From the NCBI RefSeq assembly GCF_001194135.2, contig NC_069002.1, positions 37,186,674 to 37,235,350 on the forward strand: a stretch of 48,677 nt of DNA, in the 5' to 3' direction. Position 1 is the stretch's first letter; each line of letters starts with the position of its first letter. The notes under the pieces were generated by a model, which ran no database searches, was not told the DNA's origin, and saw only the letters and a program-made list of their open reading frames with translations. Shown piece by piece: positions 1 through 47,573 of this stretch. Position numbers and translations under genes: made by a program. Source of the stretch: Octopus bimaculoides. Lineage: Eukaryota.

Positions 1-79
<79 letters not shown>

Positions 80-1889: not shown

Positions 1890-2080
1890 TATATAAACTA
1901 TATTTATGCAATCTATATATAAACAATATTTGTGTAATCTATATATAAACAATATTTATGTAATCTATATATAAACAATATTTATGTAATCTATATATAT
2001 ATATATAAACTATATTTATGCGAACTATATATATGTAATCTATATATATAAACTATAATCTATATAAACTATATACATTA
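1890..2080. repeat. AT-rich ~26-bp tandem repeat
   Basis: Repeated TATATATAAACAATATTTATGTAATC units mixed with (AT)n. Confidence 0.8.
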
Positions 2081-7623: not shown

Positions 7624-7719
7624 TGTGTGTGTGTGTGTGTGTGTGCATATAGGATTGCTTGTAGAAATACATAAATCCAGAGGTGAAGCACACTCTAAGA
7701 TGTAGAGCAGTTAATACCC

Positions 7720-7778
<59 letters not shown>

Positions 7779-9008: not shown

Positions 9009-9056
<48 letters not shown>

Positions 9057-9112
9057 TAAACCTTGGGAGAGGCATTATGCCGGTAATAAACACACGCACT
9101 GGTTCAGTCCTT

Positions 9113-9277
9113 TATTAATTTATATAGTTTTTTGTTAAATTATTTCATTGCACTCTTGCAATCTCTTCAGTAACTTGTCTCTCCACATTCAAAATAAATG
9201 GAAGTGGAGAGACAAGTTACTGAAGAGATTGCAAGAGTGCAATGAAATAATTTTAAAAAAAACTATATAAATTAATA
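9113..9277. repeat. Near-perfect inverted repeat: 74-bp arms, 17-nt spacer
   Basis: 9113-9186 is the reverse complement of 9204-9277 with 2 mismatches; it abuts an N-gap. Confidence 0.93.
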
Positions 9278-9387
9278 NNNNNNNNNNNNNNNNNNNNNNN
9301 NNNNNNNNNNNNNNNNNNNNNNNNNNNNNNNNNNNNNNNNNNNNNNNNNNNNNNNNNNNNNNNNNNNNNNNNNNNNNNNNNNNNNNN
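9278..9387. other. Assembly gap (110 N)
   Basis: N run. Confidence 1.
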
Positions 9388-9430
9388 ATTTCTTTCAACA
9401 CACGTATCCACATCAAGAATCTTGCACACG

Positions 9431-9477
<47 letters not shown>

Positions 9478-10124
9478 AACACACACACACATACCTTTCC
9501 GTGCATGTCCACTCCACACACACACGTTGGCAACATTCATTAATTTCTTGAAAATGGAGTCATAACCCCAAAATATTGAATGCAAGGTAAGTCTACATTA
9601 ATTCATATATTTATTTCTTGTGATTTACTTTGCATTTATTTTGCACTGGCAGAGATACCCGGCATTGCCCGTGTTACAGGCAATTGAAGAATTAGACTTT
9701 TCTGTTATATTTTCTCTAATGAACTGGAATACCTATGATTTGAATGTCATCAAACTTGCAAATGAGGGTTCTTTCCCTCTTTACACACCCTAAAAAATTC
9801 TAATCATGACACATGTATCCCATACTACTGATCTTTATGTGCAGATTCCAAAATTCCAGTCTTATGGAACCTGATAAAAGGATTTTGCTCATGAAAAATG
9901 GAGGTCATGGAGGTCTAAAATGTGGGAGTTAAGGCCCCTATTGGGGGTGGATGCCTTAATGTCAACCAGAGAAGTTGAATTGTTGAGGATCTTTTTAAGT
10001 TGGGTCTTGTTCGAATTTGTTTGAAATAGGAAATATATGTAAAAGAAAGCAAATATTTGTAAAGACAGCAAATCACTGTGCTGAGGTCTTGTGATTTGGT
10101 GGTAATTACATCACACAGTCCCTT

Positions 10125-10700
10125 CATGAACTTATTAGTGCAGTCTGGAGGGATGGTGCAATCCCTAAGGACTGGAAGGATGCAATTATTCTTCCTCTAT
10201 ATAAAGGAAAAGAGCCAGAACAATGTGCGGTAACTACAGAGGCATTGCTCTACTATCAGCTGCTGGCAGGGTTCTGGCAAATATTCTTCTTACCCGCCTG
10301 AATGGGTGTCTCGTAAATGATGTCCTATCTGAATATCAATGTGGCTTCCGATCTGGTAGAGGGACAATGGATATGATTTTCACAGCAAGACAGATGCAGA
10401 AGTGCTATGAGCAGAATATGGATCTTGTCCAGGTATTCATTGATTTAACAAAGGCTTTTGATACTGTAAATAGGGCCTCCCTATGGAAAATACTTGGCAA
10501 ACTTGGATGTCCAGATCACTTTGTATCTATAATTAAATCATTCCATGATGGGATGGAGGCTTGGGTCAATGTTGGTGGTGGCATGGCGGGACTTTCCTGT
10601 AGAGAATGGTGTCAAGCAGGGTGACATCCTTGCCCCAACTCTCTTTTCTTTGTACTTTGCTGCTGCTTTTACTCATGCTTTTGCTAAGGTTAGCTTTCTT
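10125..10700 (+). mobile_element. RTE-clade LINE reverse transcriptase fragment
   Basis: IPKDWKDAIILPLYKGK..CGNYRGIALLS..EYQCGFRSGRGTMDMIF..FIDLTKAFDTVNR..GVKQGDILAPTLFSLYF; frameshifted and truncated. Confidence 0.92.
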
Positions 10701-11654
10701 GGAATATATGTCAGAAAAAGTCCTAGGATCAATTCATTTGACTAAAAATTCTGCAAGGTGGTGCCCCAGCATGGCCACAATCTAATAACCGAAACAAGTA
10801 AAAGATTCAAAAGAGAAACTGTAATAAACAACATTTATTATTATATAATAGTTTAATGTCATTTTGATTTTTTTCTCATGGATTTTCATACATATTACTT
10901 AAATGCCATAGAAATTAAGGGAGGTAAAACGTAATGAACAGAAAGTTGTTGGTTGTTCATAATATTTATAAAATGGATTGTTGTTTTTCTTCTTCTTTCC
11001 AGGCACCAACAAACCAAAAGGCTGGTGTGAGAGAAAACATGTTTAAATAAAATTACACAGAAAAAAAACCAAACAAAACAAAAAATTATCAGACCATATT
11101 TTTACCTTGTGACAATAGTTTATACATCAGAAAGTCTACCTGCAGGAACAGATGTGGTTAGGTCCTTCTTATAGACATAGGAGAGGATCTGGCTTCAGTT
11201 GCTTGTTTGAGGTCCTTACAAATAACTGGTTTAAATAAGGACAAAACCCTTTCTTGTTTAGATAATTACAAAAGCCGTCATTACTGCATTTATCCACACA
11301 CTGGCTGAAGACAACACTTTATTGAGAATTATATCAAGAAGAGAACCAGATAATTTCTTCTGTATAAATGCTGGTAACAAATCCATACTCAAAAGCGACC
11401 CTGAACTCAGTCAAGTGCACACACACCTTGTATAAGCAACTTATTCTTTAGTCATAATTCCATCCACATCAAGGATGCCTTACAGGAAAATTGAGTCAAA
11501 CCAGTATTTAACTAGTACTTGATTTTTATTGACCTTGGAAGGGAATGCAAAGTTGACATAACCAAGAATTGAAATAAGAATGTAGAAGACCATAACAAAA
11601 TACTGCAGGCATTTTCTCCAACACTGTCAAATATTCTGTTAACCAATGCCAACT

Positions 11655-12150
11655 AGCTCAGACCACCTATATCACTCACCAAGGTCAAATGGGTCAGACC
11701 ACTTATACCACCCACCAAGGTCAAATGGTTTACTACACACCAAGGTTAAATGGTTGAGACCACCTCTACCATTCAACAAGGGGAAATGGTTTAGTCCACT
11801 TCTACAACTGACCAAGGACAAATGCTTCAGACCACCTCTACCACCCACCAAGGTCAAATGGTTTAGTCCCCATCTACCACCAACTAAAATCAAATGGTTC
11901 AGACAACTTCTACGACCCACAAAGGTCAAATGGCTCAGAGTGCCTCTACTACTCACCAAGGTCAAATTGTTTAGCCCACCTCTACAACCCACAAAGGTCA
12001 AATGGTTCAGACCACCCCTACTACTAACCAAAGTCAAAATGTTTAGCCCTCCACTATGACACACCAAAGTCAAATGGTTTCATCCATTTCTACCACTGAC
12101 CAAGGTCAAATCATTTAGCCCTCCTCTACCATCAACCAAGGCCAAAAGAG
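11655..12150. repeat. 36-bp minisatellite, about 14 diverged units
   Basis: Consensus ACCACCTCTACCACCCACCAAGGTCAAATGGTT(C/T)AG; the third unit is shortened. Confidence 0.92.
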
Positions 12151-15100
12151 TTATACCCGCTCCACATTCTGAAGTGTATATGTTCACTCTGTATGTGTTG
12201 GTGTATATTAGAAGTGTATAAGTTGGAGGCAACACCTGAAGTATAGTCAATTGGTCACTGTTGTGCCACAAGTTTTGGAAAGCGGGGTTAAATTTGTAAG
12301 ATTGTGGTTGAAAAACTTAAACCTTGGTAGACAAGGAAAACCAAAGTTTTTATTGCAGTTTTAACCTAGGTATGCCCTCATCAAGCAAATTGGTGATAAA
12401 ATGTTTTTAAGTTTTCACCCAGCCCCTTGGGCATCTTCTACTATAGTCCCAAGCCAATAAAAGCCTTGTGAACAGATTTAGTAAACAAAAAACGAAAAAC
12501 CCATTCTACATAATGTATGTATGCACTCATTTATATATCACAACATTCGAGCAGGGTTGTTGGTACTTTTGCCATCAATAATTTGTCTCCTCACTTCACG
12601 TCTATGAAGCCATGCAATATAAGAAATCCCTTACTTGAGAAACAGGTAAGGTTTACCATCAAGAAGGATACCCTACTGTAAAACAATGCTTCAATAACAC
12701 ATTCACCTCACCCATACTAGCATGAAAAAGCAGATGTAAAACGAATAGATGTTTGACAAATTTTGTCATCCTCTGCCCTAGTGACACTTTTACATAGACA
12801 TAAAACTTCGGGTTTTACACATAGAAGGAAGTGGCAACCTTCATGCCGATTCCATGGGATTTTAGGAAGACAAGCAATGCATTTTGAAGCAAGAATGAAA
12901 ACCGGATCAAAGAATGTTTGCCAAGAACTTTTCTCTCCTTATTGATAATGATTTCAAATGTTGATACAAGGCCAGCACTTTCGGGGAGGGGTTAAGTCAA
13001 TCCCCTCAACTCCAGTGTTCAGTTGGTCCTTGTTTTATCAAAAGAATGAGCGGATAAGCCAACCTTGGTGAAATTTGAACTCAGAATGTGGAGATAAAAT
13101 GCCACTAAGCATTTCGTGCCTGGCGTGCTGATGGTTCTGTCAGCTCACCACTTTTCTCCTCATTTGTTAATACTTGCATGTTTCTATTCTTTTCACAGAT
13201 CTCCAGAGTTCATTAGCTTGGTGCAGTGGTACTAAAACATTAAGTAGATGACAAATTTCAAACCAGACAGGATACCTGTTTATTGCAGATTCATTTCCTG
13301 GAGTGATATTGAACATGGTATTACTAATCAATAATCAATAAATAGGCACAGGTGTGGCATCTTGGGCAAGTGTCTTCTACTATAGCCTTAGGCCAACTAA
13401 AGTCATTGATAGACAAAAACTGAAACCATCAGATATATATGTTTATGTGTGTGTCTTTGTGTCTGCCCTCACCACCACTTGGCAACTGGTGTTAGTGTCT
13501 TTACATCCCCATGAATTAGCAGTTTAGCAAAAAAGACCAATATAATGAGTACTAGGCTTAAAAAATAAGTCTTGGGGTCGATTTGTTCAATTAGAACCCT
13601 TCAAAGCAGTGATTCAGCATGGTCGCAGTCAAATGATTGAAACAAGTAAAAGATAAATCATTGCACTTCCCAACCACATGGTTCCGGCCTCAGTCTCACG
13701 TCTCCTACTATAGCCACGCCTTGTAAGTGGATTCAGGAGACAGAAACTTCAAAGAAACTCATTGTATACATGTGTGTGTCCGTGTGTCCCACCTTGTTTT
13801 GACATTGCATGACAGTGGTAAATGATTGTCATTCATTTCTAATATTCTGCAAGAACATGCCTGGCCATGGGCAAACGTTGTTTGAAAATAGGTGAGAGTT
13901 GGCGACAGGAAAGACATCCAGCCATAGAAAATCTACCTTGATAAACTCCATCCAATCTTGGAAAAGTTAAATAATGTTGATGTTAATAATGATGATGATG
14001 ATGGATTGTCAAGCCTTTTGGCCAAGGATGTATTCCATTGCTGGTGATGGGCTGCTAATCACCAGGCAGTACACCTAATTGTCAACTTAGTGAGGATTCC
14101 TTTTAGTGGGTAAAATTTAACCTGTTAAGCTGTCTGAGACTGCCTGTCATTCTATGATGCAAAATTATCCATTTCACACTAGCATTTATGTTCAAACTGG
14201 CCAGGTCTGGTCTCTCACACCTACCTTACAATGTCATTCTAAAAGTAAACTGGGAAGATGACAGACCAAGATGACTTCAGCTCAGAACATAAAGAGCAGG
14301 AACTAATACATCACAGCATTTTGTCCAGTACTCTAATGCCAAGAGTAAACAGAGAGTATGTAACAGCTATTGTAAATAAAGGGTCTTCGTGTAAATATTT
14401 AAGATTTTAATCCATTAAAACCACTTTGCCTGGCCTAAATGTTGTTTTATGTTTAGATTCAATAGATCTGGCCTCACACCTATTCTACAATGTCATTCTA
14501 AAAGTAAACAATCACATCATTGAAATCTCAAAGCTACAACAAAATTCATGATTGATTTGATTAATTCAAAACAACAATGTGAATAAATAGGCATTACATT
14601 CAATAGTGTAACTTAAATGTTAAAGACAAAGTAAACAACTGCAAGAAAAGTTAGCTACCAACACAAACGATACTGGCTAAATGACCAACCAATCACTTAT
14701 TTGCAGTTTTCATTCCTCAACTGCCATCTCACCTTCTGTCAAATGAGTCGTTGGTTTACATCCAGTCACCTGTAATGCACTGCATTATAATCCAGGTAAA
14801 CACATTAAAAACTTACAACACTTCATCTATACCTAGCTGCAAACAAGTAACTATGAGGTACACTCCATTATTGTTTAACCCTAGGTCAATCCAGACTCAG
14901 GAGACCTGTAGCTAAAGGAATTCAAACCATGACCATTTCATCTATTTTTGATACTCTGCCCCAGTCAAGATGTTTGCAATATCACTTTTGGTCCTAGGAT
15001 ACAAAACTCCTGTTTTACAGTAATCTAAATTAAAACATTCCATCAGAATTTCCTGTTATGTTTCAAACACCAGATTAATAATGACAAAAGTTATTTTAAT

Positions 15101-15821
15101 AAACTCTTCATTATTTCAAAATCTAATTCAGAGGCTGCATGGTTCAACAGAAAGATGGTACTAAAGGGGTTCAGGTAAGTCCTTGTAGGTAGGTCTGCAG
15201 AATCTAATATGTTCTTTTATTGTTCAAGATGGTGTGATTTAATGGAGATTTGGCTGCTATTTAGAGTAAATTGAGCAATTAATACAGAGGCTCCCCATTG
15301 ACTTGTGTTGTAAGCAGTTCAAGAAGGGGATTTTGATGTTTCATTAACTTGCTGTGAATAGTGCAAATCCTCCAAAAGGGGTTTTGCCTGTAACAGAATA
15401 GCCCTGATTGTACCCTAACCCCTAATTCAATCACTCTTCCCACCACCACAACAGGTTAGACTCAGTATGAATGACCCCATACCTTCAATCCAATATACCA
15501 TTTTGTAACTATGTTGCATTTGTTTATTGGTGTATTTAGTAAACAAGTTGCAACAGATATGACACCAATTGCAATATAGATTAACAGAATGAGATAACTG
15601 TAAAGAGACTAGATTAAAAATTGGAAGAGAGATTAAGAATGAAATGTACTAATATGGCATCATAAAGTCTGCCCCTCTTTTAGGAAAACTGTCAGTCGCT
15701 ACCTTGTGTCACAAATAAGAATTACCATCATCAAAGGCTTTACTGAAAGAGATAGATACTTTCTACAAGAACATTTAGCAAGTAATGCTTTTATATATAT
15801 ATATATATATATACATATACA

Positions 15822-16100
15822 CATGGTGAAGTGGTTAGGGTATTCACCTCACAATCATAAATTCGGGAGTTCAATATCTGGTGGCACATTGAGCAAGACA
15901 CTTTATTTCAAGTTGCCCCAGTCTACTCAGCTGGTAAAAACGAGTAGTTCCTGTATTTGAAAAAACCAGATTTGCCACATTCTGTGTCATGCTAAATATC
16001 TTTGAGAACTATGTTAAGGATGGAGTGCTCAGCCTCTTGCACGTTAACTTCATAAGCAGGCTGTTCCATCAATCCAATCAACTGGAACCTTCATTGTCGT
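15822..16100 (+). mobile_element. tRNA-derived SINE family D
   Basis: Head with A-box/B-box-like motifs (GGTGAAGTGGTTAGG..GGAGTTCAATATC). The tail ..GATGGCGTGCCAGTT recurs reversed at about 27768-27830. Confidence 0.55.
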
Positions 16101-18100
16101 ACTGATGGCGTGCCAGTTATATATACATATATATTATTGTAATGACCAGACTACTGGATGTTGTTACATACACCACTAGTCACAATGCATTTCCTCTCAT
16201 TGTTGTAACTTTCAAATACTGTTACATCGTTGGCTAGGCATGCAAACCAACATTCCTCCTAAACTGACCACCATTCTGTTGTAGAGTTATTCATTACAAG
16301 TGAGTGGATTGGAACAATATGAAGTGAAGTATTCTGCTCAAGAGCACAATGTACTGCTGGTCTGAAAAAAAAAACAATCTTGCAATCATAAGTACAACGC
16401 CCTAACTGCTAGGCTGTGTGCTGACGCATGTATATAAGCGATAGCGGCAGTATTAATTAAATAAATATACATTGGCAACAAGTTCACTGGCTAATTGTGA
16501 CCCCAGTGCCTGCTCTGGCACTATTTTTCTTATATATCACTGGAAGGGAGATAAGTTGTTGCTATCTCTAGTGGCCGAGCGTCCATCACTGACAAGACCA
16601 AGGAAGGTTGAAATCACGTGATCTGGAGGTGACAAGGACTTATCTTTCCACTAGCAATATAAGCAAGAGTACACTTTGCACCAAATGCCAATATGTGAAT
16701 TTCCCTCATGGTATCTACTGCAGTATAGTCTGTCCTAACATAACATCCACATTTAAGTGGGGATAAATATATATTCATATGCATACACAATACAATAGAC
16801 TTCTTTCAGTTACTGATTACCAAATCCATTCACAAGGTTTTCGTTGGCTCAGGGCTATATTAGAAGACACTTGTCCAAGTTGCCATGAAGGGGAACAAAC
16901 CTGAAACCATGTGATTTGGAAACCTACTTCTCAATCACACCCATAACAATTACAACCCATGTTAACCAATTCCACATTCAGTTCGCTTCTACTTTCTTGT
17001 GATTCATTAGGTTTATTCAGGTTAAGTGTAAGCAGAGGTACTTGCAACAGAGGTACTCTGCACCTGTCCAGATGCTTGCAATACAGGTACCCTCTACCTT
17101 TCAAGGTGCTTGCCACTACATCACCAAAATCTTTTGACAGTTAGTCAATTTGAAGAGATAATATGTGGTAACTAATAACTGCTAATACAAATATTGCTTT
17201 CTACAACTATGAATAAAAAGAAAACAAACAACAAAAAAAGAAAGCAACAAACAAACAGAACAGCTAATTTCAATGTTTAAACTGTTGTTAATTAATAGTA
17301 ATCATACATGGATTTTTTTTTTTCTCGGGGGGAAAAACTCAACATATTTATTCAAGGGAAACTACGGATTTAAATAAACATTACAAGACTTTTTTGCATT
17401 GTTTATATATACATAATATAAACTGGTTTCCATATGAATAGTGTGTGTACATACTTTAATATCTATATACTCTATACACACACACACTCGCTCATGAGTG
17501 TGTGTGTATAAACATATTTTTTTAAGATTGGAGACAAATCATAAACACACATATATACATACTTAAAAAAAAAAGTTATACACCCACAGGGAATCATGCA
17601 ACATACATTTTCATACAAATATGAGAGGGATAGAAAACAGCCAACACGCACACACATGCACGCGTCAACACACAATCTGAAGACTGAAGTCAATATGTGT
17701 TTCAGTCACAGATATACTATATAAACATCACAGATATCATGTTTGGTGACATGATGGGTAAAATTCAGCTTTGGGTAATGTCTTCTTCCCTTGTGACTAA
17801 CTTGAAACAAAGAAGAGAGATAACCAAAGTTTTCTTTACCTCGATAGAATCACACACATGTACATATACATATGCATGTGTGAGATTCACATACAAATAT
17901 GCATGAGTATTTGAAGGGCTAGCTAGTCGGATAACTAGCTAGCTAGTCACTCTCTAAGGAAACGACTCAAGACATTAAAAATGCGGAGAATTAATATATA
18001 TTGACTAGTTTCATTACGAAGTGAAACATGTTTGACAAGATCACATGATCGAAAAATACAGCAGTTTGTAATGAAACTATTCAATAACTAAATGCATGAC

Positions 18101-18164
<64 letters not shown>

Positions 18165-18985
18165 CTCATCAGTTAGGTTTTTTAATTGGTCTTTTTCATT
18201 ATCAGCTTTATCATAAGTCACAAAACTTGCTCGCAAGATGGTCTGTCCTTTGCAATGGTGACTAGTGTGTGTGTGTGTGTGTGTGTGTGCAGGAGGGTGG
18301 GATGAGCAGATGGGTTGTAGTGGTGTGAGTGGGTGCATGGTGGAGACACGGGTCAAAGACAGGCAGAGTCCAGAGGTTGATGCTGCAATGAATCTAGAAA
18401 ACTGGGCCCAGCAGAGGGTGCTGTGTGCAGCTTATGATGTTTATGATGGCAATAGTGGTGATAATGATGCTGTGATGGGGGATAGGAAAATAAAATGAAA
18501 AAAAAAAACAAGAGAACACAGCCAAAAGAAAAAGAAAACAAAAAGATCAAAGTTGGATGTGGTACAACAGAAGAAACAATATCTCAAAGATGAATTCCAT
18601 AAGTATATATATATGGTACACATTAGAAAAAAAAAATAGCCAGTAAGTACACACTGAATCAGTCCCAGCCAACAAATTCCAGAATCCTGCAAAAAAAAAA
18701 AAAAAAATCCACTGCTTGGGAGCATCTGGTGAGAGTAGTGGTGAGGAGAGATAGTTGCAGGGATTGGATAGGCTGTTGGACATGATGAAAGGGGTGTGTG
18801 CATATGAAGGGGGGGAGCATTGCAGGCCATAGATTGGATGGATGGAGAGGCAGTGGATGAGTGTGTGAGCGAGAGTGAGTGTGTGTGTGTGTGTGTGTGT
18901 GTGATAGCTTTGCAAGGCAAGCTGAAAAGGAGGAAACTGGCCAAGACAAGGTGAGCTGTTGGGGATAAATACTTGGTTAAGTTAG

Positions 18986-19861
18986 NNNNNNNNNNNNNNN
19001 NNNNNNNNNNNNNNNNNNNNNNNNNNNNNNNNNNNNNNNNNNNNNNNNNNNNNNNNNNNNNNNNNNNNNNNNNNNNNNNNNNNNNNNNNNNNNNNNNNNN
19101 NNNNNNNNNNNNNNNNNNNNNNNNNNNNNNNNNNNNNNNNNNNNNNNNNNNNNNNNNNNNNNNNNNNNNNNNNNNNNNNNNNNNNNNNNNNNNNNNNNNN
19201 NNNNNNNNNNNNNNNNNNNNNNNNNNNNNNNNNNNNNNNNNNNNNNNNNNNNNNNNNNNNNNNNNNNNNNNNNNNNNNNNNNNNNNNNNNNNNNNNNNNN
19301 NNNNNNNNNNNNNNNNNNNNNNNNNNNNNNNNNNNNNNNNNNNNNNNNNNNNNNNNNNNNNNNNNNNNNNNNNNNNNNNNNNNNNNNNNNNNNNNNNNNN
19401 NNNNNNNNNNNNNNNNNNNNNNNNNNNNNNNNNNNNNNNNNNNNNNNNNNNNNNNNNNNNNNNNNNNNNNNNNNNNNNNNNNNNNNNNNNNNNNNNNNNN
19501 NNNNNNNNNNNNNNNNNNNNNNNNNNNNNNNNNNNNNNNNNNNNNNNNNNNNNNNNNNNNNNNNNNNNNNNNNNNNNNNNNNNNNNNNNNNNNNNNNNNN
19601 NNNNNNNNNNNNNNNNNNNNNNNNNNNNNNNNNNNNNNNNNNNNNNNNNNNNNNNNNNNNNNNNNNNNNNNNNNNNNNNNNNNNNNNNNNNNNNNNNNNN
19701 NNNNNNNNNNNNNNNNNNNNNNNNNNNNNNNNNNNNNNNNNNNNNNNNNNNNNNNNNNNNNNNNNNNNNNNNNNNNNNNNNNNNNNNNNNNNNNNNNNNN
19801 NNNNNNNNNNNNNNNNNNNNNNNNNNNNNNNNNNNNNNNNNNNNNNNNNNNNNNNNNNNNN
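18986..19861. other. Assembly gap (876 N)
   Basis: N run; the long X-containing ORFs across it are artefacts. Confidence 1.
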
Positions 19862-19863
19862 AT

Positions 19864-19915
<52 letters not shown>

Positions 19916-20483
19916 TCATACATATATACACACATATACATACACACACACATACGTATACATACACATGTGTGCATGTGTATGTAAATATATGTATATA
20001 TTGACACATGCACACTTATGCATCCCGGTAATTCCTGAAAATCTAAGCATATCAGGGAATTCTGTTATGAGAGATTGATTTCCATTTAAGTTGAAAGTTG
20101 AAGGAGAATCCATTTCCTATCATGGAACAGAATCCGATATTTTGTCAAGACTTTCAGGAATGCAACACTTTTGTGAAACAAGTGTGCTGCCTCTTAATAT
20201 ATGTAATTACACAAGCATACATATATGTGAGTGTATATATATGTATATATACACACACGCATATACATTCTATGCTAGTTAATATAAGTAATTATACATA
20301 TATGTGTGTTTGTGTTTGAGTATATATATGTGTGTATGTATGTATGTATGTACATACATATATTTTATATGCTTATGTACCACACACACATATACATAGG
20401 TTTATGCATATACATGTGTATTACATATGTACATACATACACCCATATCTATATATATATATATATATATCTATATATATATA

Positions 20484-20517
<34 letters not shown>

Positions 20518-20796
20518 TAGATAGTCACATTTATATAGAAACAGAAAGAAACAGTTATAAAGTAATTGTAATATTACAGGAAGAAAAAACTGCAATGAAT
20601 CCATATTCTGGGGGGCAGCGATAATAGACAGTGAAACGTTTTATAGCCAGTGAACAGGTGAGATGAAGGTAAACACAGGCAGGTAAAGGCTGGCATTGCA
20701 AACAGGTTGGTAGGAAGAAAGGAAGTTAGGTTGATAAATTGTTGGGTGAGCACCCAAAGAGAGGTGTGAACATGGCATATAATAGGCCATTTTTAT

Positions 20797-20991
20797 TCAA
20801 GCCATGTAGATGAACAAGTTGATGTTATCCTCATCACGGCGCATATATTTATGTTCAATCAACCACTCTATCTGTTCTTTGATGAGCTTTTTGGAGGGAA
20901 GAAACATATTCTTCAGGATCTCTACCAGTTCTGTCTGGAGGGCAGCATTGGTAATTTTCTTGCGCATCTTCATGATCTTTACGATAGCTTC
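20797..20991 (-). CDS. CUL5: Cullin-5 coding exon 18 (terminal; neddylation winged-helix domain)
   Basis: ccag|EAIVKIMKMRKKITNAALQTELVEILKNMFLPSKKLIKEQIEWLIEHKYMRRDEDNINLFIYMA*; 195 nt. The IMKMRK neddylation-lysine motif is intact. The 18 exons sum to 2337 nt (778 aa plus stop). Confidence 0.98.
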   Translation of the reverse strand, partial: EAIVKIMKMRKKITNAALQTELVEILKNMFLPSKKLIKEQIEWLIEHKYMRRDEDNINLFIYMA

Positions 20992-27452: not shown

Positions 27453-27689
27453 NNNNNNNNNNNNNNNNNNNNNNNNNNNNNNNNNNNNNNNNNNNNNNNN
27501 NNNNNNNNNNNNNNNNNNNNNNNNNNNNNNNNNNNNNNNNNNNNNNNNNNNNNNNNNNNNNNNNNNNNNNNNNNNNNNNNNNNNNNNNNNNNNNNNNNNN
27601 NNNNNNNNNNNNNNNNNNNNNNNNNNNNNNNNNNNNNNNNNNNNNNNNNNNNNNNNNNNNNNNNNNNNNNNNNNNNNNNNNNNNNNNNN
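27453..27689. other. Assembly gap (237 N) in CUL5 intron 10
   Basis: N run. No CUL5 coding sequence is missing, because exons 10 and 11 join in frame. Confidence 1.
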
Positions 27690-37379: not shown

Positions 37380-38950
37380 CTCACTGTAATATAGCATAGC
37401 TGTACGTACAGGCATTATTACAATCTACCTTTCAATCATAGGAAAAGGCCCCTTGTTACAAACAAAGGTGATAGGGTTCTGAACTATGGCCCAGCTTGCT
37501 CTTATTCTACCAACTATGCTTTCAGAACTTCCTCCTCTACTGTTAACTTGGTCACCTAGGTAACAGAATCTGTCTACTACTACTACTACTGGACATTTGA
37601 GGACATCTATTCTCTGTACATTCTTAGTGTTTATTGTACCTGCACATCTACCACACACAAAGACTGCTTTTTTTCTGTTAACCTTCTCGTGATACTGCTG
37701 CACCTATGTGTCCATAGCTTGCACTTGGTATACAGTGTGGAGTTTCTACCAACTCCTTTCCTACATATTGAACAGGGCCATCTTCCTGAAGGGATTGGAG
37801 ATATGTCTGTGTTCCTAATTACTAGGACTTTGGTCTTAGCTAAATTAACTTTAAGGCCCTTAGATTCCAGACCTTGCTTCCACACCTGAAATTCCCTCTC
37901 TAGTTCAGGGAGTGATTCAGTTATAAGAATAAGGTCATTAGCATAGGGACACTCCCAAGGGCAGCCAGTCTTAAACTCCTTTGTTAGAGCCTGGAGAACT
38001 ATGATAAACAAGAAGGGGCTGAGAAGTGATCTACTTGTACACTAAATTCATTGCTATGGTCGTTGCCAACCTTTACCTTACTGACAGCATTTCTGTACAC
38101 AGCTGTACAGCCCTCATCAAACACTCATCTATTGATAGCTTTTAGAGTGAACATCAGATGAGGGAGTGAGGGACCCTGTCAAAGGTTTCCTCCATGTCTA
38201 CAAAAGCCAAGTACAGAGATTTATTCTTGGCTTCTCCCAGGCACGAAACCAAACGACATCTCATCCAGTTTAACTCCCTTCCTAATATCTGTAACTTTCA
38301 TGACCTGGTCCAACAATTTAATACTTCTGTAATTATTTCTGTCCAAGGCATCACCTTTTCCTTTGTAGCAGTTGACGGTAATGTTGCTACACCAGTTGTG
38401 TATGACTCCCTCGTGGATTAACAATATAGGTGACTAACCCATACCCCACTTGGCCAGATATTTTCATCATGTCAGTGATGATCCCTGATGGGCCAGGGGC
38501 ATTCCCTGTCTTCATATCCTTAATTGCTCTATCTACCAAGCTACTGTCAATTCAGATAGCTGGTTCCTCTGTTGCATCGACATTAGACAGACTCTCCTTC
38601 TCCCATGCATTCTCTACTTTTACCAACCATCTCATAGTAGCATTTCCAAGTTTTTTTCTTCTTTGCAGAATCACTAACTGCAAGTGTACCATCATCCATG
38701 TGAACACACTTCTCTCCTACATCATAATTGTCTTTCACTCACTATCATGCAATCCGAAACACCTCAAGCTGCTGGCCCTCATCTCACAGAACACTGGCAA
38801 ACTTCTTCCTTTCCACTTCTCTCCTGGCGAAATATACCCATCTCCTAACCTCCCATCTAGTTATTTGATATAGTTCCCTGCTCCTACCACTGTTCCAGTC
38901 CCATTTCTTCACTCTAATAGCCGTCTACTACACTGTTCCACCACCATGTC
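37380..38950 (-). mobile_element. RTE-type LINE, decayed RT region (CUL5 intron 1)
   Basis: KTGNAPGPSG..KGKGDALDRNNYRSIKLLDQVMKV..GFVPGRS; FIIVLQALT..GCPWE..YANDL..GLKVNLAKTKVL..WPCSICRKGVG; RFCYLGD; many stops. Confidence 0.88.
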
Positions 38951-41889: not shown

Positions 41890-44137
41890 ACAACAAATTT
41901 CTTTCAGTTTACATCTACTAAATCCACTCACAAGGCTTTGGTAAACCCAAGGCTATAGCAGAAGACGCCTAAAGTGCCATGCATTAGGATTGAACCTGGA
42001 ACCATGTGGTTAGGAAGCAAGCTTCTTACCACACAGCCATGCCTGCAAAAATCAATGATTAACCTTAATAATGGTCCTTGCTTATCTGCATTAAATATCA
42101 TAGTTAAAACTTTGTTGAATTTATGAAATATATGCACTAAATCAGTGCTAAAGAGCAAAATCTTAAACCAAACTGCATAAATCAAAATGAATGAGGGATG
42201 GAACTTTCCACGGTGAGTCAGTGAATATTTTAAGAAAAGGAAATATAGGAACATTAATAAATAACTCAGACAGACAAAACACACACGACATGGCTATTTT
42301 CAATATCATTTCGTGTTACACTTGCCACACAATTTCCGAATGCCAAACATTACATACAAAGGCACAGGCATGCCTGTGTGATAACAAGTCTTGCTTCCCA
42401 ACCACACCATGAGCATGCGTTTTCTAATGTAGACCCAGGCTGCCCAAAGCCTTGTGAATTTGGTAGAGAGAAACAGGAAGAAGCCTGTCATATAAATAGA
42501 TGGGTGTGTGTTTGTGTGACTGTCTCCTTGCTTTGACTTCAGGTGATAGTTGTAAACGAATGTCACCACCATGAAACTGGTGTCCGTCGTCGTCTCCACT
42601 CTTCTATGAAAATATGTCTGGTCATGGGAAAATTTTACCTTACACGGAAAGGGCGAAAGTTGACGAGAGGAAGGGAACCTGGCTGTAGTAAGTCAGTCTC
42701 AACAAATTCCGTCTGACCTATTCTGGCATGGAAAACTGACGTTAAACGACAACGATTATTTTATATATATATATATATATATATATGCCTTCTCTAAACG
42801 ACCCCTAATCCTTTACACCATTAGTCATGTGATACAAGTGTAGTTACTGCCTATTAAACGATGTCCAAAGACCAGAGTTCCTTTTATATTTGCACACTAA
42901 TAAATAATAATTCAAGAAGCAATAACTGTTTTATTAATCTAAACGCATACAACAACAAAAATGCGAAGAACAACCTTTAGTTAAAAGAAAAAAATAAACG
43001 TGAAGATATGACCAGGACACGAAGATCGAAATCATAAAGTGAGAATTGGGCATGCTGAAAGGTTTAAGATCTGGATATAAAATATGAATTAAACTTACTT
43101 GTGAAATGAATATTTTCTTAAATATATAATATAAATTATTTTGTTCTTGTAAAAGTACAAATGTAACAAGAGAAGACTAATCAATTATACTCTTTCTTTG
43201 ACAATACTAGAAATTCCTGCATACATCAAGTTTGCACTGAGAAGAATTTGCTTATGTCTAATGGTCCAGATAACAATGTTTAAGGAAATAAAAAGAAAAA
43301 CTATCTTGTTTCATAAGTACGGGAATGAAAAAGCGAGAAATGTTTATTTAATATTAAATCATCAAATATTTTATTTTATGATGGTCAAGATTGTATAGAA
43401 GGATTAAAGAATGTTGTTACTTGTTTATCTAGAGTGAAATCTGAGCGGTTAAATTTGTTTTTTTATTTTTCAACCTTTTCTCAATGCAACTTCAATTAAA
43501 TGTCTCCAGCCAATTAAGACAATAGATCACTCATAAGTACGATCGGTTTTCCTGTCGGGGGAAACACTAATCGGAAATAATCGATATGAAGTAATTAATA
43601 AAATGACATTAAAAGAACACATACTAAAAATTTGCATTTTTTTCTTTCAATATTTTATAAACAAAATATCTACTTTAATCTTACTTCGAACAGTGGAGTG
43701 ATGCGGGAGGTGAGAGAATTTTAACGGAATATAAGCAGTTCCAATTTATTTTTCTCTTTGTGAGAATTGGCAATTGTACAAACTATGGCCTAAACGGTAA
43801 ATAATATAAAAGCGCTGTGAAATAAGACATAAACCGTGCATAGAAACTGCAAATATTTCATTTCATAATTAAGAAGAATTTCTATTTAATGTAATATAGT
43901 GGAATTGGTTTGTGTAACTAAGTCTTTTATTTGAGAAGTGGGGTCAGATTTGGTAACTTTGGACCATATAACATTTTAGTTGGAAAATAGTGTTTTGCTA
44001 AATCTGCTACAAAGTATATAACAAGTTAATGATTGTCATTTCTTGTCAAATATATGATTAAAAATGAAAAATACCAGCTGTACTACCTCGAATGATATAT
44101 ATAACACGAAGATAGAAATGCAAATTTCAGGTTATTA

Positions 44138-44171
<34 letters not shown>

Positions 44172-44894
44172 ACCTCGAAAATTACAAGGTGACTACAAGA
44201 ATCAACCATTATAACAGCCACAAGTGAAGACATGTGAGAGACTTATGTAAATATTTCAAAACTGAGAGGTAATATTTACGTATGCACAAAGGATAAGTCA
44301 AAAGGTATAAAAAGATAAACAAAAGAGAGAGAAAGGGAAAAAACGATTGTCTTATTCTTTCTCATATTGATATTTCATTTTTTTCCCACGAACACTCAAG
44401 TGTGTAATTTTATATAATGAAAATATAAACTCTATAAATTATAGAGAAGAAAGCAAAAAACAAAAAGAAAAACTGCGGTCCATTTTAGTTTTTACGAAGG
44501 AAAATATTTGGGAGCGATATTTGAAAAGATATAACTGTGCTAGGGATAAAACGGTAGATTAGAGATCAAATGTGATTTATATTATAGCAGTAAGTATATA
44601 ATAATCCGGACACAAGTAAATATAATGCACATGCTTCGGGGGTATTTAGTAAGCTGAACGAGTCAAACGTGTATTGTTGTAGTTTGATGAGGAATATTGA
44701 AAGCAAGTCGGGACCCAAAGTTGAAAGCGTTGAGTTTTACGGCAGTTTTAAAATAAAATTGAAATTAAAAATAGCTAGATAAAAACAGAATTAAGCCTTG
44801 TAATGCACAGAGAGAAATAGGGCAAGAATGGAAAGGAATAATCAGGTAAAATGTCCTACAAGAATCTGGAAGAGGCGAAGATCATTGGACTCAC

Positions 44895-44909
44895 CTTTAA
44901 CATCGCCAT
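44895..44909 (-). CDS. CUL5: Cullin-5 coding exon 1 (MAMLK)
   Basis: Minus strand reads aacaatATGGCGATGTTAAAG|gtgagt: good start context and a consensus donor. Phase 0 joins exon 2 in frame, giving MAMLK|QGQSQFEEKW (human, from memory: MATSNLLK|NKGSLQFEDKW). Confidence 0.85.
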
Positions 44910-44950
44910 ATTGTTTCTCGAGAGAATCTCGCGAGAACTGACAAAACAGC
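44910..44950. promoter_or_regulatory. 41-nt spacer between the divergent CUL5 and VBP1 start codons, with TCTCGCGAGA (44927-44936) and TCTCGAGAGA (44916-44925)
   Basis: Read directly. TCTCGCGAGA is the palindromic CGCG element (attributed to BANP, formerly Kaiso/ZBTB33) of vertebrate housekeeping promoters. Both ATGs sit in YY1-like ATGGCG contexts. Confidence 0.75.
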
Positions 44951-45013
44951 ATGGCGGCCGACAAGGCAGACGAAGAGCAGAACCACAGCGGAATCCCCAA
45001 GGCAGACTTTGTG
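44951..45013 (+). CDS. VBP1: Prefoldin subunit 3 / VHL-binding protein 1, coding exon 1 (later exons not found in the window)
   Basis: aacagcATGGCG...: MAADKADEEQNHSGIPKADFV|gtaggt. HSGIPKADFV matches the HLGIPEAVFV motif of human VBP1/PFDN3, and the phase-0 donor falls right after FV, where I recall the human exon 1 ends. Based on 21 aa only. Confidence 0.8.
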
Positions 45014-46245
45014 GTAGGTTACAGTATTTCTAGGCAATGGAAACGATTCTTATCTTCAATTTGGGTTACGCTTGAGTGTTTCCAATGCAGTAATTACTTA
45101 CTGTTTTGTAAATATTTAATATTTTTTTTCGTTTCAAGATAAGGAAGAGGAACTAAAAAGAGAAAATAAGAAGATAACTTGTCACACACAGCTTCTATCG
45201 ATTATTTAACCTAATAATTAAATATTCTCTCTTAATAATATTTTCCTCTTGATAATTTCGATATTTTCTGAGTAAGCGTAAGAAAATAATTATCAAAGAT
45301 GATTAAATACTGCACGGGAACTCAATGGAGTCAATCTTAAACCATAAATGTTTAAAAAATGTTTTACATGAAGAAACATAAAAAAAACCCCAATAAGTTT
45401 ATTATGTAAATTTTTATTGATCTGCCATAAAAGGAATATTTATTTCAGATTGACCCTTTTCTCTTCCATTTAGAGCCCACCAGAAACATTACGTTTCCCA
45501 ATTCACCTTTTAATATTGAAACATTTTCCCATTCTGGTCTTGACGCTTGTTGATGAATCTTACCTGCGACTCGTTTCCTTCAATATAAAAGTTGACAATT
45601 AAAGTTTAAATATAAAATTTTACTATCGATCCCTTAATTATTCCTTCTGTCTCCACGAGAATTTAAGCTGATGCCGTTTTCAGTTGATTAGAAAAATATT
45701 TCTAATTTGAACATTGATGATGATTCATATTTCATGTTCAGAACGTCGAAGCTATTTTCACTCTTCCATCGCTTTTAATTCGAGTTTAATTTTTCCGAGA
45801 TTTTATTTATAGAATTTTGTTACCTCTCCATCTTTCATTATTTTTTTTTCTGTTCACAAGTAGATTGAAATAATATATTTTAAAATACTGTTGACCTTCA
45901 CATAACTTACGATATATTTTAAATTCCTGTGTAGTTTAATTCGTTAGATTCGTATAGGTTTTTATCGGTTCATACTCAAGATTCATTTATACCATATATA
46001 TCTCTGTAAAGGAAATTTCATTCAAAAACAAGTATTTTTAATGAAAGTTCTGAGAAAGCCAAGTCGCGTGGGGTGGATGGAGGCACACTTCTATATTTAT
46101 CTTTTAAAAAAATCGAATTCTATAACGTTAAAACGTTCAAATTTTTGGTTTCTGTTCTCTGGAAGCTGCTATAATGGCTGGAAGAGAGTTTATGTGCTTA
46201 AGATTTCTAAGCTTTTTTGTGTCTCTCTCTAGGGGTGAAAAATGG

Positions 46246-47573
46246 GGTACTATTTAAGAAGAGTGGTCCCTTCGCGCGCACCCGCGCTAGTCAGTAGACT
46301 AGTCAGCACCTGCGATAGAAAAATTTTTAAAAAACCCCACATGTATAAATATGTGCAAACTGTAAATCGGAGGGGGTGGGGTGGATTTATCTATCAAAAC
46401 AAACAACCGACTGAATGAATGAAAATAAAGAAAATTAAAATAAAATCTTACTCAAAAGTAGTCATTAAGAAAAGTGAAGATAATGAAATAAAATGTTATT
46501 TACTTACTCAAAAGTGAACCATTCTGAAAGATGTTTTAGAATGTTCCAAAAACATTCGTCTCCAGTCTTCCCACATTTCCCCCCTCCAAAGAAACTCGTC
46601 AAGATAGGATTCAATCATATTTGTGTGTACTTCCATCATGCTCTTGAATTTATGGTCCAGAAAAGTCTCCATAAATATCTCATGGCAGGTCTTTCAGAAG
46701 CAATGGTGATAGAGTGGTATCAATACATGAGACATAGTAAGTCACCATCTTGTATGTAATCCCTACAAAGTTGGAGGAGTTAGGGTACATCGTCGAAATA
46801 GACGAATCATTTGATGTGCCAAAGGAAGTATAATAGAGGCAGAATACCACAGGAGAGGTGGGGTTTTTGGAGGATGGGACAGAGAAGACAAAATAGGACT
46901 TCTGGTGTTCCTCTGAAACTTTGCTCCCCCTTATCAGAAAGTATATAAAATCAGGAACGATTACCCATTCGGATTGTTGGAGTGGATACAATGGAATAGT
47001 TGAAATTGGTGTTGGACCATGGTATTCCTATTTCAAAGTGAACCATAGAGAAAAAATCTGTGAATCCAGTAACTAACATACATACCAACTCAGTTGAATG
47101 TTACTGGAAAAAATGTGAGAAGCAGATTCAAAAGTATGATGGAAGTATACACAAATATGATTGAATCCCATCTAGACGAGTTTCTTTGGAGGAGGAAAAA
47201 TATGGGAAGACTGGAGATGAATGTTTTCGGAAAAATTCTAAAATATCTTTCAGAATGGTTCACTTTTGAATAACGACTACTTTTGAGTAAGCAAATTTTT
47301 ATTCTCACTTTTTTTAATGACTACTTTTGAGTAACATTTTATTTCAATTTCAAAATTTGTTTTATTTTCATTCATTCAGTCGGTTATTTGTTTTATTAGA
47401 TAGATAAAGGGATAGATAAATTCCCCCTCCCTCCCATTTACAGTTTACACATATTCATACATGTAGAGGTTTTTTTTTTATTGCAGGTGCTGATTAGCGC
47501 ATGTGTGTGCGGTATGTGCATCCGCTGATTGGCATGGGTGTACATGTCAGGTCCACTCTTCTTAAGTAGTACC
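46246..47573 (+). mobile_element. Merlin (IS1595/ISXO2-like DDE) DNA transposon derivative, non-autonomous
   Basis: Termini GGTACTATTTAAGAAGAGTGGTCC and (reverse complement) GGTACTACTTAAGAAGAGTGGACC. Perfect 8-bp TSD AAAAATGG at 46238-46245 and 47574-47581. Decayed transposase at about 46680-47230: VIEWYQYMR, IVEIDES, TLLPLIRKYIKSGT..HSDCWSGY, VNH, LDEFLWRRK. Confidence 0.9.

What the first reader, a model, noticed from the sequence alone, without database searches (positions are those of the whole stretch)
44916..44936. Tandem TCTCGCGAGA (CGCG/BANP-type) palindromes in an invertebrate bidirectional spacer
Seen in the sequence: TCTCGAGAGA (one mismatch) and a perfect TCTCGCGAGA, 1 nt apart, fill half of the 41-nt spacer. 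Established for vertebrates: this palindrome is a methylation-sensitive activator motif of CpG-island housekeeping promoters, associated with bidirectional transcription and bound by BANP. Inference: a mollusc may use the same orientation-free element to drive two essential genes, implying deep conservation of this promoter logic or a BEN-domain equivalent. Both ATGs also lie in YY1-like motifs (AATATGGCG, AGCATGGCGGC), and an ATTGG (inverted CCAAT) lies at 44884-44888.
Basis: partly seen in the sequence, partly recalled or inferred. Interest (0 to 1): 0.75.

Follow-up and report, generated by a model that had tools for sequence, protein, structure and literature searches.

The report
Conserved BANP-type palindrome, octopus CUL5–prefoldin promoter
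A 10-base palindrome known from vertebrate housekeeping promoters sits between two back-to-back essential genes in the octopus genome. It is kept at the same spot in animals from amphioxus to molluscs, and octopus has the matching binding protein, so this promoter switch is probably far older than vertebrates.

Summary
A perfect TCTCGCGAGA (44927-44936) and a one-mismatch copy (44916-44925) fill 21 of the 41 nt between two divergent start codons. These are the only two hits in the window (0.07 expected).

The window is Octopus bimaculoides. The genes are cullin-5 (minus strand, 18 exons) and prefoldin subunit 3/VBP1 (plus strand, exon 1 only).

The same head-to-head pair occurs in eight further species and in RNA contigs of one unnamed cephalopod. 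These are two other Octopus species, Argonauta, a cuttlefish, a snail, an oyster, a brachiopod, an annelid and amphioxus. Each spacer carries TCTCGCGAGA or a split form, TCTCG-N7-CGAGA, which occurs nowhere else in those loci.

Octopus encodes a BANP orthologue. Its BEN domain is about 78% identical to human and keeps the DNA-contact residues.

So the core reading, an ancient BANP-type element in an unmethylated-looking promoter patch, is well supported by computation. Binding and activity are untested.

Caveats:
- The imperfect copy equals a mutant that was inactive in human reporters.
- The motif lies too close to both ATGs for the human TSS spacing rule, and RNA contigs from another cephalopod run through it.
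- The YY1-like contexts cannot be separated from coding constraint.
- The CCAAT box is not supported.

The parts
44927..44936 (.). Perfect 10-bp palindrome TCTCGCGAGA (CGCG element / BANP-type motif)
   Evidence: It is the only perfect copy in the window. It is invariant in O. sinensis, O. vulgaris, Argonauta, cuttlefish, another cephalopod, Batillaria and Lingula at the orthologous spacer.
44916..44925 (.). Imperfect copy TCTCGAGAGA (reverse complement TCTCTCGAGA). The TCTCG half-site is intact and the CGCG core is lost.
   Evidence: It is identical in the three Octopus species. The matching position reads TCTGCCGAGA in cuttlefish and TGCCGCGAGA, 16 nt away, in Argonauta. The same sequence was inactive in human reporters (PMC6192621).
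44910..44950 (.). 41-nt spacer between the two divergent start codons
20797..44909 (-). Cullin-5 (CUL5) gene: 18 coding exons. Exon 1 is 44909-44895 (MAMLK), intron 1 is about 8.8 kb, and the stop codon is at 20797-20799.
   Evidence: Spliced model with GT-AG at every junction, 778 aa. The product is identical to XP_014781406.1, cullin-5 of O. bimaculoides.
44951..45013 (+). Exon 1 of prefoldin subunit 3 (PFDN3/VBP1): MAADKADEEQNHSGIPKADFV, followed by a GTAGGT donor. The rest of the gene lies beyond the window end.
   Evidence: The orthologous Argonauta protein matches PDB 7wu7_3 'Prefoldin subunit 3' at E = 3.5e-69, and the match includes the exon-1 GIPxAxFV segment. A Prefoldin gene is called head-to-head with CUL5 in the three Octopus assemblies.
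44948..44958 (+). PFDN3 start context. The 12-mer CAGCATGGCGGC (44947-44958) matches 11 of 12 positions of the TISU/YY1 consensus.
   Evidence: TISU properties are from PMC2518114. The consensus SAASATGGCGGC is recalled from memory, not found in the text searched. It is also Met-Ala-Ala coding sequence, so no function can be assigned from sequence.
44904..44912 (-). CUL5 start context AATATGGCG (YY1-like core)
   Evidence: AGAAACAATATGGCGATG is invariant across four octopods.
42500..46500 (.). CpG-undepleted patch (CpG o/e about 0.6-1.5, GC 27-38%) around the promoter. It abuts the CpG-depleted CUL5 body (o/e about 0.05-0.6).
   Evidence: This fits the O. bimaculoides class with a methylated gene body and unmethylated TSS (PMC9476566). 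Methylation here is inferred from CpG depletion, not measured.

Best explanation
TCTCGCGAGA at 44927-44936 is a selectively maintained cis-regulatory element of the compact shared promoter and 5' region of two divergent housekeeping genes of Octopus bimaculoides: CUL5 on the minus strand and PFDN3/VBP1 on the plus strand.

The most likely mechanism is the one established in vertebrates. The two half-sites, TCTCG and CGAGA, are recognised by the BEN domain of the octopus BANP orthologue while the CpGs are unmethylated. BANP then keeps the promoter nucleosome-free and supports constitutive transcription.

Shown here:
- The sequence itself and the gene models.
- Conservation of the motif at orthologous loci.
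- A BANP orthologue with the DNA-contact residues conserved.
- A CpG-undepleted patch around the promoter.

Inferred:
- BANP binding.
- The unmethylated state.
- Transcriptional activation.
- That the element serves both genes.

The adjacent imperfect copy is probably a decayed or auxiliary half-site rather than a second full element.
For: 1. The motif is non-random in the window: two hits against 0.07 expected.

2. Gene models are exact. CUL5 equals XP_014781406.1 and the neighbour is prefoldin subunit 3.

3. The PFDN3-CUL5 head-to-head pair recurs in O. sinensis, O. vulgaris, Argonauta, Acanthosepion, an unnamed cephalopod (RNA contigs), Batillaria, Ostrea, Lingula, Owenia and Branchiostoma.

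4. In the eight paired loci scanned, the spacer holds the only occurrence of TCTCG-N(0-15)-CGAGA in the whole 27-49 kb locus. Five have N0 and three have N7. The two loci without the pair (Centruroides, Lytechinus) have no such site near CUL5. Flanking spacer sequence cannot be aligned between phyla, so this is selection on the motif rather than simple inheritance.

5. Among four octopods the motif is one of the few invariant non-coding blocks.

6. Octopus 'protein BANP' (P0378) matches human BANP at E = 2e-67. Its BEN domain is about 78% identical, S313 and R316 are conserved, and so is the loop N/S/H/K. Its only PDB matches are BANP (contact residues from PMC10206803).

7. Human CUL5 is on the published list of genes potentially regulated by CGCG elements (PMC6192621 S2 File).

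8. The CpG o/e profile fits an unmethylated promoter next to a methylated gene body (PMC9476566).
Against: - There are no binding, methylation, TSS or reporter data for octopus.
- Genome-wide enrichment of the motif at octopus promoters could not be tested.
- The geometry does not fit the human rule of a TSS 20-70 nt from the motif, because the ATGs are only 14 and 17 nt away.
- RNA-derived contigs of another cephalopod run through the motif, so at least some transcripts start beyond it.
- In three species the half-sites are 7 nt apart, yet a 1-nt insertion kills the human element.
- The isolated BANP BEN domain binds weakly and is not methylation-sensitive in vitro (PMC10206803).
- The region is AT-rich (27-38% GC), so it is not a CpG island by vertebrate criteria.
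Confidence: 0.6

Rival explanations
1. The palindrome is a functional, conserved promoter element, but a different factor reads it in molluscs. One candidate is a ZBED1/DREF-type protein, whose human site TGTCGCGACA and fly DRE TATCGATA are similar CG-core palindromes (recalled from memory). Another is an unknown dimeric factor that tolerates 0 or 7 nt between half-sites.
For: The N7 split form in oyster, Owenia and amphioxus is hard to reconcile with the human element, which is killed by a 1-nt insertion. The oyster spacer also carries a DRE-like ATCGATAG. Several proteins, including Kaiso/ZBTB33 and DYRK1A, have been linked to this motif in human ChIP data (titles and abstracts).
Against: The half-site TCTCG is exactly the protein-binding-array optimum of the BANP BEN domain, AAATCTCG (PMC10206803). 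Batillaria (AAATCTCG), oyster (AAATCTCG on the other strand) and amphioxus (AATCTCG) even carry the A-rich flank. A BANP orthologue with conserved contact residues exists in octopus. No search was made here for ZBED1 or Kaiso orthologues.
Confidence: 0.2
2. The element belongs essentially to CUL5 as a promoter-proximal or 5'UTR element. It is not a shared bidirectional driver. PFDN3 relies on its own YY1/TISU-type start element and merely sits next to it because the spacer is compact in cephalopods.
For: The motif-to-CUL5-ATG distance is 12-24 nt in 9 of 11 sources, while the distance to the PFDN3 ATG ranges from 14 to 225 nt. Human CUL5, which is no longer paired with VBP1 (recalled from memory), is still listed as a CGCG-element gene, and VBP1 is not. 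The PFDN3 start lies in AAAATGGCGG(C/A) in Lingula and amphioxus and CAGCATGGCGGC in octopus.
Against: In oyster the split motif lies 17 nt from PFDN3 and 95 nt from CUL5. In cephalopods it is as close to PFDN3 as to CUL5. The human element drives transcription in both directions in reporters (PMC6192621). This rival concerns the target genes and is compatible with BANP binding.
Confidence: 0.3
3. The palindrome acts after transcription. Because it lies in the overlapping 5' ends of both mRNAs, it could form a small hairpin (the N7 or N11 forms) or be read by an RNA-binding protein to tune translation of both genes.
For: RNA contigs of another cephalopod contain the motif upstream of the spliced CUL5 CDS. 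One contig ends in an adapter 80 nt upstream of the ATG. Hairpins using TCTCG/CGAGA are predicted for the octopus, oyster and amphioxus spacers.
Against: No common structure is predicted: Lingula and Batillaria do not pair the motif. The z-scores are modest, from -2.5 to +0.5. The 'stem' bases never covary, being invariant in all species, while the 'loop' varies freely. That is the signature of sequence-specific recognition, not of a structure. A contiguous 10-nt palindrome cannot fold on itself.
Confidence: 0.05
4. The match is a chance occurrence in a CpG-containing stretch and has no function.
For: Only one perfect copy exists in the window, and no functional data exist.
Against: 0.07 hits are expected against 2 observed. 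The same 10-mer or its split form is found in the same spacer in every source that has the gene pair, and nowhere else in the loci scanned.
Confidence: 0.01

Closest known systems
CGCG element / BANP motif (TCTCGCGAGA) of vertebrate CpG-island promoters (Mahpour et al. 2018, PMC6192621; Grand et al. 2021, cited in PMC8887127; Mikula et al. 2010, PMC2920758)
   Same: The 10-bp palindrome is identical. It lies at the promoter of housekeeping genes, in a head-to-head gene pair, and in a patch that has kept its CpGs. An orthologous BANP protein is present. Human CUL5 is itself listed as a CGCG-element gene.
   Different: The host is a protostome with mosaic gene-body methylation and an AT-rich promoter (27-38% GC), not a vertebrate CpG island. 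The motif is 14 and 17 nt from the start codons, whereas the human element sits 20-70 nt upstream of the TSS. RNA contigs of another cephalopod include the motif, so it is probably transcribed. In three other phyla the half-sites are 7 nt apart.
Tandem multi-copy CGCG elements in human promoters (PMC6192621)
   Same: Two motif-like units lie 1 nt apart. In human reporters copy number scales output.
   Different: The second octopus unit is TCTCTCGAGA, the exact variant that abolished activity in human cells. It is better described as one full element plus an extra TCTCG half-site.
TISU / YY1 start-site element (Elfakess and Dikstein 2008, PMC2518114)
   Same: The PFDN3 start CAGCATGGCGGC matches 11 of 12 positions. 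The gene is a housekeeping protein-folding factor, and the implied 5'UTR could be very short (the human median for TISU genes is 12 nt).
   Different: The TSS position is unknown. The sequence is also Met-Ala-Ala coding sequence. The CUL5 start matches only 9 of 12. YY1 binding is untested.
DRE/DREF (fly TATCGATA) and human ZBED1 site TGTCGCGACA (from memory, not tested here)
   Same: A short CG-core palindrome at housekeeping and bidirectional promoters of invertebrates.
   Different: The flanking bases differ (TCTCG rather than TATCG or TGTCG). No ZBED1/DREF orthologue was examined.

Membership tests
CGCG element / BANP motif | 10-bp palindrome TCTCGCGAGA with an intact CGCG core and TCT/AGA flanks | tested here: met
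   Perfect match at 44927-44936.
CGCG element / BANP motif | The second (tandem) copy is itself an active element | tested here: not met
   44916-44925 is TCTCGAGAGA, the reverse complement of TCTCTCGAGA. That is the CGCG-to-CTCG mutant, inactive in human reporters (PMC6192621). Activity in octopus is untested.
CGCG element / BANP motif | Evolutionary conservation at orthologous promoters | tested here: met
   N0 or N7 form in the PFDN3-CUL5 spacer of all 11 sources examined, from amphioxus to octopus.
CGCG element / BANP motif | Lies in an unmethylated CpG-island promoter | tested here: inconclusive
   CpG o/e is about 1 over 42.5-46.5 kb against about 0.05-0.6 in the gene body. GC is only 27-38%, and methylation was not measured. 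The published O. bimaculoides methylome has such a gene class (PMC9476566).
CGCG element / BANP motif | Positioned about 20-70 nt upstream of divergent TSSs | tested here: inconclusive
   No TSS data exist for octopus. The ATGs at 14 and 17 nt make the outward 20-70 nt geometry impossible for full-length proteins. RNA contigs of another cephalopod include the motif.
CGCG element / BANP motif | Bound by BANP through its BEN domain | not testable with these tools
   The prerequisite is met. Octopus BANP orthologue P0378 scores E = 2e-67, with S313, R316 and the loop contacts conserved.
CGCG element / BANP motif | Activity and binding in vivo abolished by CpG methylation | not testable with these tools
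   No data.
CGCG element / BANP motif | Genome-wide enrichment at promoters of the species | not tested
   The octopus genome is not searchable with the collections offered. Only about 150 kb of Octopus sequence was in hand.
Bidirectional (head-to-head) promoter | Two divergently transcribed genes with starts less than 1 kb apart | tested here: met
   The start codons are 41 nt apart on opposite strands.
TISU / YY1 start element | Consensus SAASATGGCGGC containing the start codon, within about 30 nt of the TSS | tested here: inconclusive
   PFDN3 matches 11 of 12 and CUL5 matches 9 of 12. The TSS is unknown, and the sequence is confounded with Met-Ala coding and G at +4.
CCAAT box (NF-Y) | A conserved CCAAT at a fixed promoter position | tested here: not met
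   The ATTGG at 44884-44888 lies in CUL5 intron 1 (GTGAGTCCAATG). It reads TCAAT in Argonauta. A 5-mer is expected by chance about every 500 nt.

The most novel reading that the evidence does not exclude
The PFDN3-CUL5 bidirectional promoter and its BANP-type palindrome date back to the bilaterian ancestor, and so predate vertebrate CpG islands. The element would exist in two interchangeable architectures: the known contiguous TCTCGCGAGA and an undescribed split form, TCTCG-N7-CGAGA, seen in oyster, annelid and amphioxus. That would imply that BANP, or whatever dimer reads it, recognises half-sites with flexible spacing.
Probability: 0.35. Interest if true: 0.75.

Novelty: new member of a known kind. 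Interest (0 to 1): 0.55.

Why it matters
The BANP/CGCG system is currently described as a feature of vertebrate CpG-island promoters. I searched the held PMC and bioRxiv library and found no description of the motif outside vertebrates.

A perfectly conserved instance at one orthologous promoter from amphioxus to octopus, together with BANP orthologues across protostomes and deuterostomes, suggests something older. A CpG-containing, potentially methylation-sensitive activator site marking housekeeping promoters may have existed before genome-wide methylation and CpG islands evolved.

This gives a concrete, testable locus for asking how promoters stay unmethylated in mosaic-methylated invertebrate genomes. 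The split-palindrome variant offers a natural experiment on how the factor reads its site.

Tried and rejected
- tblastn with a remembered human VBP1 found only exon 1 in the window. The rest of PFDN3 lies beyond the window end.
- The first CUL5 search used only the N-terminal 249 aa. It returned only short gene models and missed the source species, so it was repeated with the full protein.
- Centruroides and Lytechinus CUL5 loci have neither the prefoldin neighbour nor the motif, so the arrangement is not universal.
- The Liolophura protein was not on record.
- The cuttlefish transcript contig L006 has an unrelated 5' part and gave no TSS information.
- The BANP search in the 90%-clustered database listed only mammals. 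The 50%-clustered search plus cluster names were needed.
- The RNA or DNA hairpin idea was rejected: there is no common fold and no covariation.
- POLR2F is the downstream neighbour in oyster and Lingula but is not in the window.
- The CCAAT box was rejected.
- Chance was rejected.

Full report
**Observation.** The sequence reads ...catATTGTT TCTCGAGAGA A TCTCGCGAGA ACTGACAAAACAGC ATGgcg....
- The one-mismatch copy is at 44916-44925 and the perfect palindrome at 44927-44936.
- The minus-strand start codon is at 44909-44907 and the plus-strand start codon at 44951-44953.
- The spacer is 41 nt, and 21 of those belong to the two copies.
- With up to one mismatch these are the only hits in the 48,677-base window. 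Dinucleotide shuffles give 0.07 expected, and none of 100 shuffles had two or more.

**What flanks it.** The window is eukaryotic, AT-rich (35% GC) and interrupted by three N gaps.

On the minus strand I assembled an 18-exon gene. Every intron has GT-AG ends. It runs from exon 1 (44909-44895, MAMLK) across an 8.8-kb first intron to a stop at 20797.
- Its 778-aa product is cullin-5.
- It is letter-for-letter identical to XP_014781406.1 of Octopus bimaculoides, and to the O. vulgaris and O. sinensis proteins.
- Orthologues from a scorpion, a cockroach and a snail start the same way (MAAMLK, MAVMLK, MAMLG), so the start codon is genuine.

On the plus strand, 44951-45013 encodes MAADKADEEQNHSGIPKADFV followed by a GTAGGT donor.
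- The corresponding full protein of Argonauta matches PDB 7wu7 chain 3, 'Prefoldin subunit 3' (VBP1), at E = 3.5e-69. The match includes this exon-1 segment.
- The rest of that gene lies beyond the window end. In the O. bimaculoides assembly the gene runs past 10 kb.

The window is 100% identical to O. bimaculoides GCA_001194135.2, CM046622.1.

**Chromatin context (inferred).** CpG observed/expected is about 0.05-0.6 (mostly 0.1-0.4) from roughly 4.5 to 42.5 kb, which includes the CUL5 body. It is about 0.6-1.5 from 42.5 to 46.5 kb, around the promoter.

The published O. bimaculoides methylome describes a class of broadly expressed genes with methylated bodies and an unmethylated TSS (PMC9476566). 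The CpG profile fits that class. Methylation at this locus was not measured here, and at 27-38% GC the patch is not a CpG island by vertebrate criteria.

**Orthologous loci.** I fetched the CUL5 locus from other species using proteins returned by the homology searches. A Prefoldin (PF02996) gene lies head-to-head with CUL5 in all of the following:
- O. sinensis, O. vulgaris and Argonauta hians;
- the cuttlefish Acanthosepion pharaonis;
- RNA-derived contigs of a further, unnamed cephalopod;
- the snail Batillaria, where exon 1 is unannotated but readable;
- the oyster Ostrea edulis;
- the brachiopod Lingula;
- the annelid Owenia;
- the cephalochordate Branchiostoma belcheri.

The pair was not found in the sea urchin Lytechinus, where a tubulin gene lies upstream. 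Nor was it found in the scorpion Centruroides.

**The motif in those spacers**.

| Source | Form | Distance to CUL5 ATG |
|---|---|---|
| Three Octopus species | perfect TCTCGCGAGA | 17 nt |
| Cuttlefish | perfect | 17 nt |
| Argonauta | perfect | 45 nt |
| Unnamed cephalopod (RNA contigs) | perfect | 23 nt |
| Batillaria | perfect | 12 nt |
| Lingula | perfect | 24 nt |
| Oyster | split, TCTCG-TTTGCAA-CGAGA | 95 nt |
| Owenia | split, TCTCG-CGTTAGA-CGAGA | 20 nt |
| Amphioxus | split, TCTCG-CAATTCA-CGAGA | 23 nt |

- In each of the eight paired loci scanned, the spacer holds the only occurrence of TCTCG-N(0-15)-CGAGA in the whole 27-49 kb locus.
- The two loci without the gene pair have one unrelated hit each, far from CUL5.
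- Spacer length ranges from 41 to 259 nt, and the sequence around the motif cannot be aligned between phyla. The recurrence therefore reflects selection on the half-sites.
- Within octopods, the motif, the CUL5 start context (AGAAACAATATGGCGATG) and the PFDN3 start are the invariant blocks. The 13-17 nt between the PFDN3 ATG and the motif vary.

**The candidate reader protein.**
- My remembered human BANP sequence was validated. Its BEN domain is 100% identical to PDB 7yuk_A, and the full sequence is 100% identical to P0241.
- An exhaustive search of cluster representatives with P0241 found 311 proteins at E <= 1e-10.
- Cluster names show 'protein BANP' in O. bimaculoides, O. sinensis and O. 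vulgaris (P0378, E = 2e-67).
- Orthologues also occur in bivalves, a nemertean, an annelid, a priapulid, chelicerates, a hemipteran, echinoderms, a hemichordate and lamprey.
- The octopus BEN domain is about 78% identical to the human one.
- It keeps S313 and R316, which contact bases in the crystal structure. It also keeps the loop residues N/S/H/K, which contact the backbone (contacts from PMC10206803).
- Its only PDB matches are BANP chains.
- The BEN-domain optimum on protein-binding arrays, AAATCTCG, is literally present in Batillaria and oyster. Amphioxus has AATCTCG.

**What does not fit the simple picture.**

1. The 'tandem' partner. TCTCGAGAGA is the reverse complement of TCTCTCGAGA. 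Mahpour et al. built exactly this CGCG-to-CTCG mutant, and it abolished bidirectional reporter activity (PMC6192621).
   - It is conserved within Octopus. Cuttlefish has TCTGCCGAGA at the same place, and Argonauta has TGCCGCGAGA 16 nt away.
   - What persists is a loose second half-site, not a second full element.

2. Geometry. In human the element lies 20-70 nt upstream of outward-pointing TSSs. Here that would place both TSSs downstream of their start codons.
   - One option is very short 5'UTRs. The PFDN3 start CAGCATGGCGGC matches 11 of 12 positions of the TISU element, which supports translation from 5'UTRs with a median of 12 nt (PMC2518114).
   - The other option is that the two mRNAs overlap at their 5' ends.
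   - Four independent RNA-seq assemblies of another cephalopod join the spliced PFDN3 mRNA and the spliced CUL5 mRNA into one contig across the spacer.
   - A fifth contig ends in an Illumina adapter 80 nt upstream of the CUL5 ATG, inside PFDN3 exon 1.
   - So at least some CUL5 transcripts contain the motif. This is suggestive only, because it comes from unstranded assemblies of a different species.

3. Anchoring. The motif stays 12-24 nt from the CUL5 ATG in 9 of 11 sources, whatever the spacer length.
   - Human CUL5 is on the published list of CGCG-element genes, and VBP1 is not.
   - The element may therefore primarily serve CUL5.

4. The N7 split form. It has the same spacing in three phyla, yet a 1-nt insertion kills the human element. 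I have no explanation. A dimer with flexibly tethered BEN domains is speculation.

**Rivals.**
- Another factor reading the palindrome cannot be excluded (about 0.2).
- A post-transcriptional role is unlikely. Folding gives no common structure, and the putative stem never covaries.
- Chance is excluded.

**Minor claims.**
- ATGGCG at both start codons fits the YY1/TISU core, but it also encodes Met-Ala with G at +4. Nothing can be concluded from sequence alone.
- The ATTGG lies in CUL5 intron 1 and is not conserved in Argonauta, so it is not supported.

**Comparison and novelty.**
- The element works like, and by sequence is, the vertebrate CGCG/BANP motif.
- The defining functional features could not be tested: BANP binding, methylation sensitivity, TSS relationship and genome-wide promoter enrichment. 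One of them, TSS distance, probably differs.
- In the held literature the motif is described only for vertebrates, as 'evolutionarily conserved in vertebrates' (PMC6192621). Five searches found no invertebrate report. That library is incomplete.
- I therefore file it as a new member of a known kind. The N7 split form and the ancient PFDN3-CUL5 pairing are the more novel by-products.

**Verdict.**
- Confidence that the motif is a functional conserved cis-element: about 0.9.
- Confidence that it works through BANP as in vertebrates: about 0.6.
- Interest: 0.55.

Noticed in passing
L007 9889-9905; L009 10033-10049; L010 9961-9977: A split palindrome, TCTCG-N7-CGAGA, replaces the contiguous motif in the PFDN3-CUL5 spacer of oyster, the annelid Owenia and amphioxus. 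The gap is 7 nt in all three, and the gap sequence is not conserved.
   Followed up: partly
window 20797-45013 and loci L001, L004, L005, L007-L010, L019-L021: The head-to-head PFDN3(VBP1)-CUL5 gene pair is conserved across molluscs, a brachiopod, an annelid and amphioxus. It is absent in the sea urchin and scorpion loci examined. In oyster and Lingula the gene downstream of CUL5 is also shared (RNA polymerase subunit Rpb6).
   Followed up: partly
L011-L016 (RNA-seq contigs, e.g. SRR27666064): Single contigs join the spliced prefoldin mRNA and the spliced CUL5 mRNA in opposite orientation across the spacer, which implies overlapping 5' ends. L016 begins with an Illumina adapter fused 80 nt upstream of the CUL5 ATG.
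   Followed up: partly
window 1-4500 and 4500-20800: CpG depletion (o/e about 0.05-0.5) continues past the CUL5 3' end down to about 4.5 kb, then o/e rises to about 1 in 1-4.5 kb. This suggests another CpG-depleted unit and a second undepleted patch. No gene was identified there, and no Rpb6 homologue is present.
   Followed up: partly
window 37634-38041 (-) and 10205-10621 (+): Reverse-transcriptase (PF00078) fragments of retroelements. One lies inside CUL5 intron 1 and one lies downstream of CUL5.
   Followed up: yes
window 46500-47320: An inverted pair of related ORF fragments (…SKVNHSERCFRMF… and …MMEVHTNMIESYLDEFLWR…) lies in PFDN3 intron 1. They look like remnants of a transposable element. 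There is no Pfam match.
   Followed up: partly
L001 10001-10091; L001 2622-9043; L005 10001: Public gene models are wrong at this compact promoter. The Batillaria CUL5 model starts upstream and translates through the motif, and its prefoldin model lacks exon 1. The cuttlefish CUL5 model lacks exon 1.
   Followed up: yes
window 9278-9387, 18986-19861, 27453-27689: Assembly gaps (runs of N). The third lies in a CUL5 intron.
   Followed up: no
L007 about 9958-9966: The oyster spacer carries a DRE-like ATCGATAG about 40 nt upstream of the CUL5 ATG, in addition to the split palindrome.
   Followed up: no
PMC6192621, S2 File: The human list of genes potentially regulated by CGCG elements includes CUL5, CUL3, YY1, BEND3 and BANP itself.
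   Followed up: no
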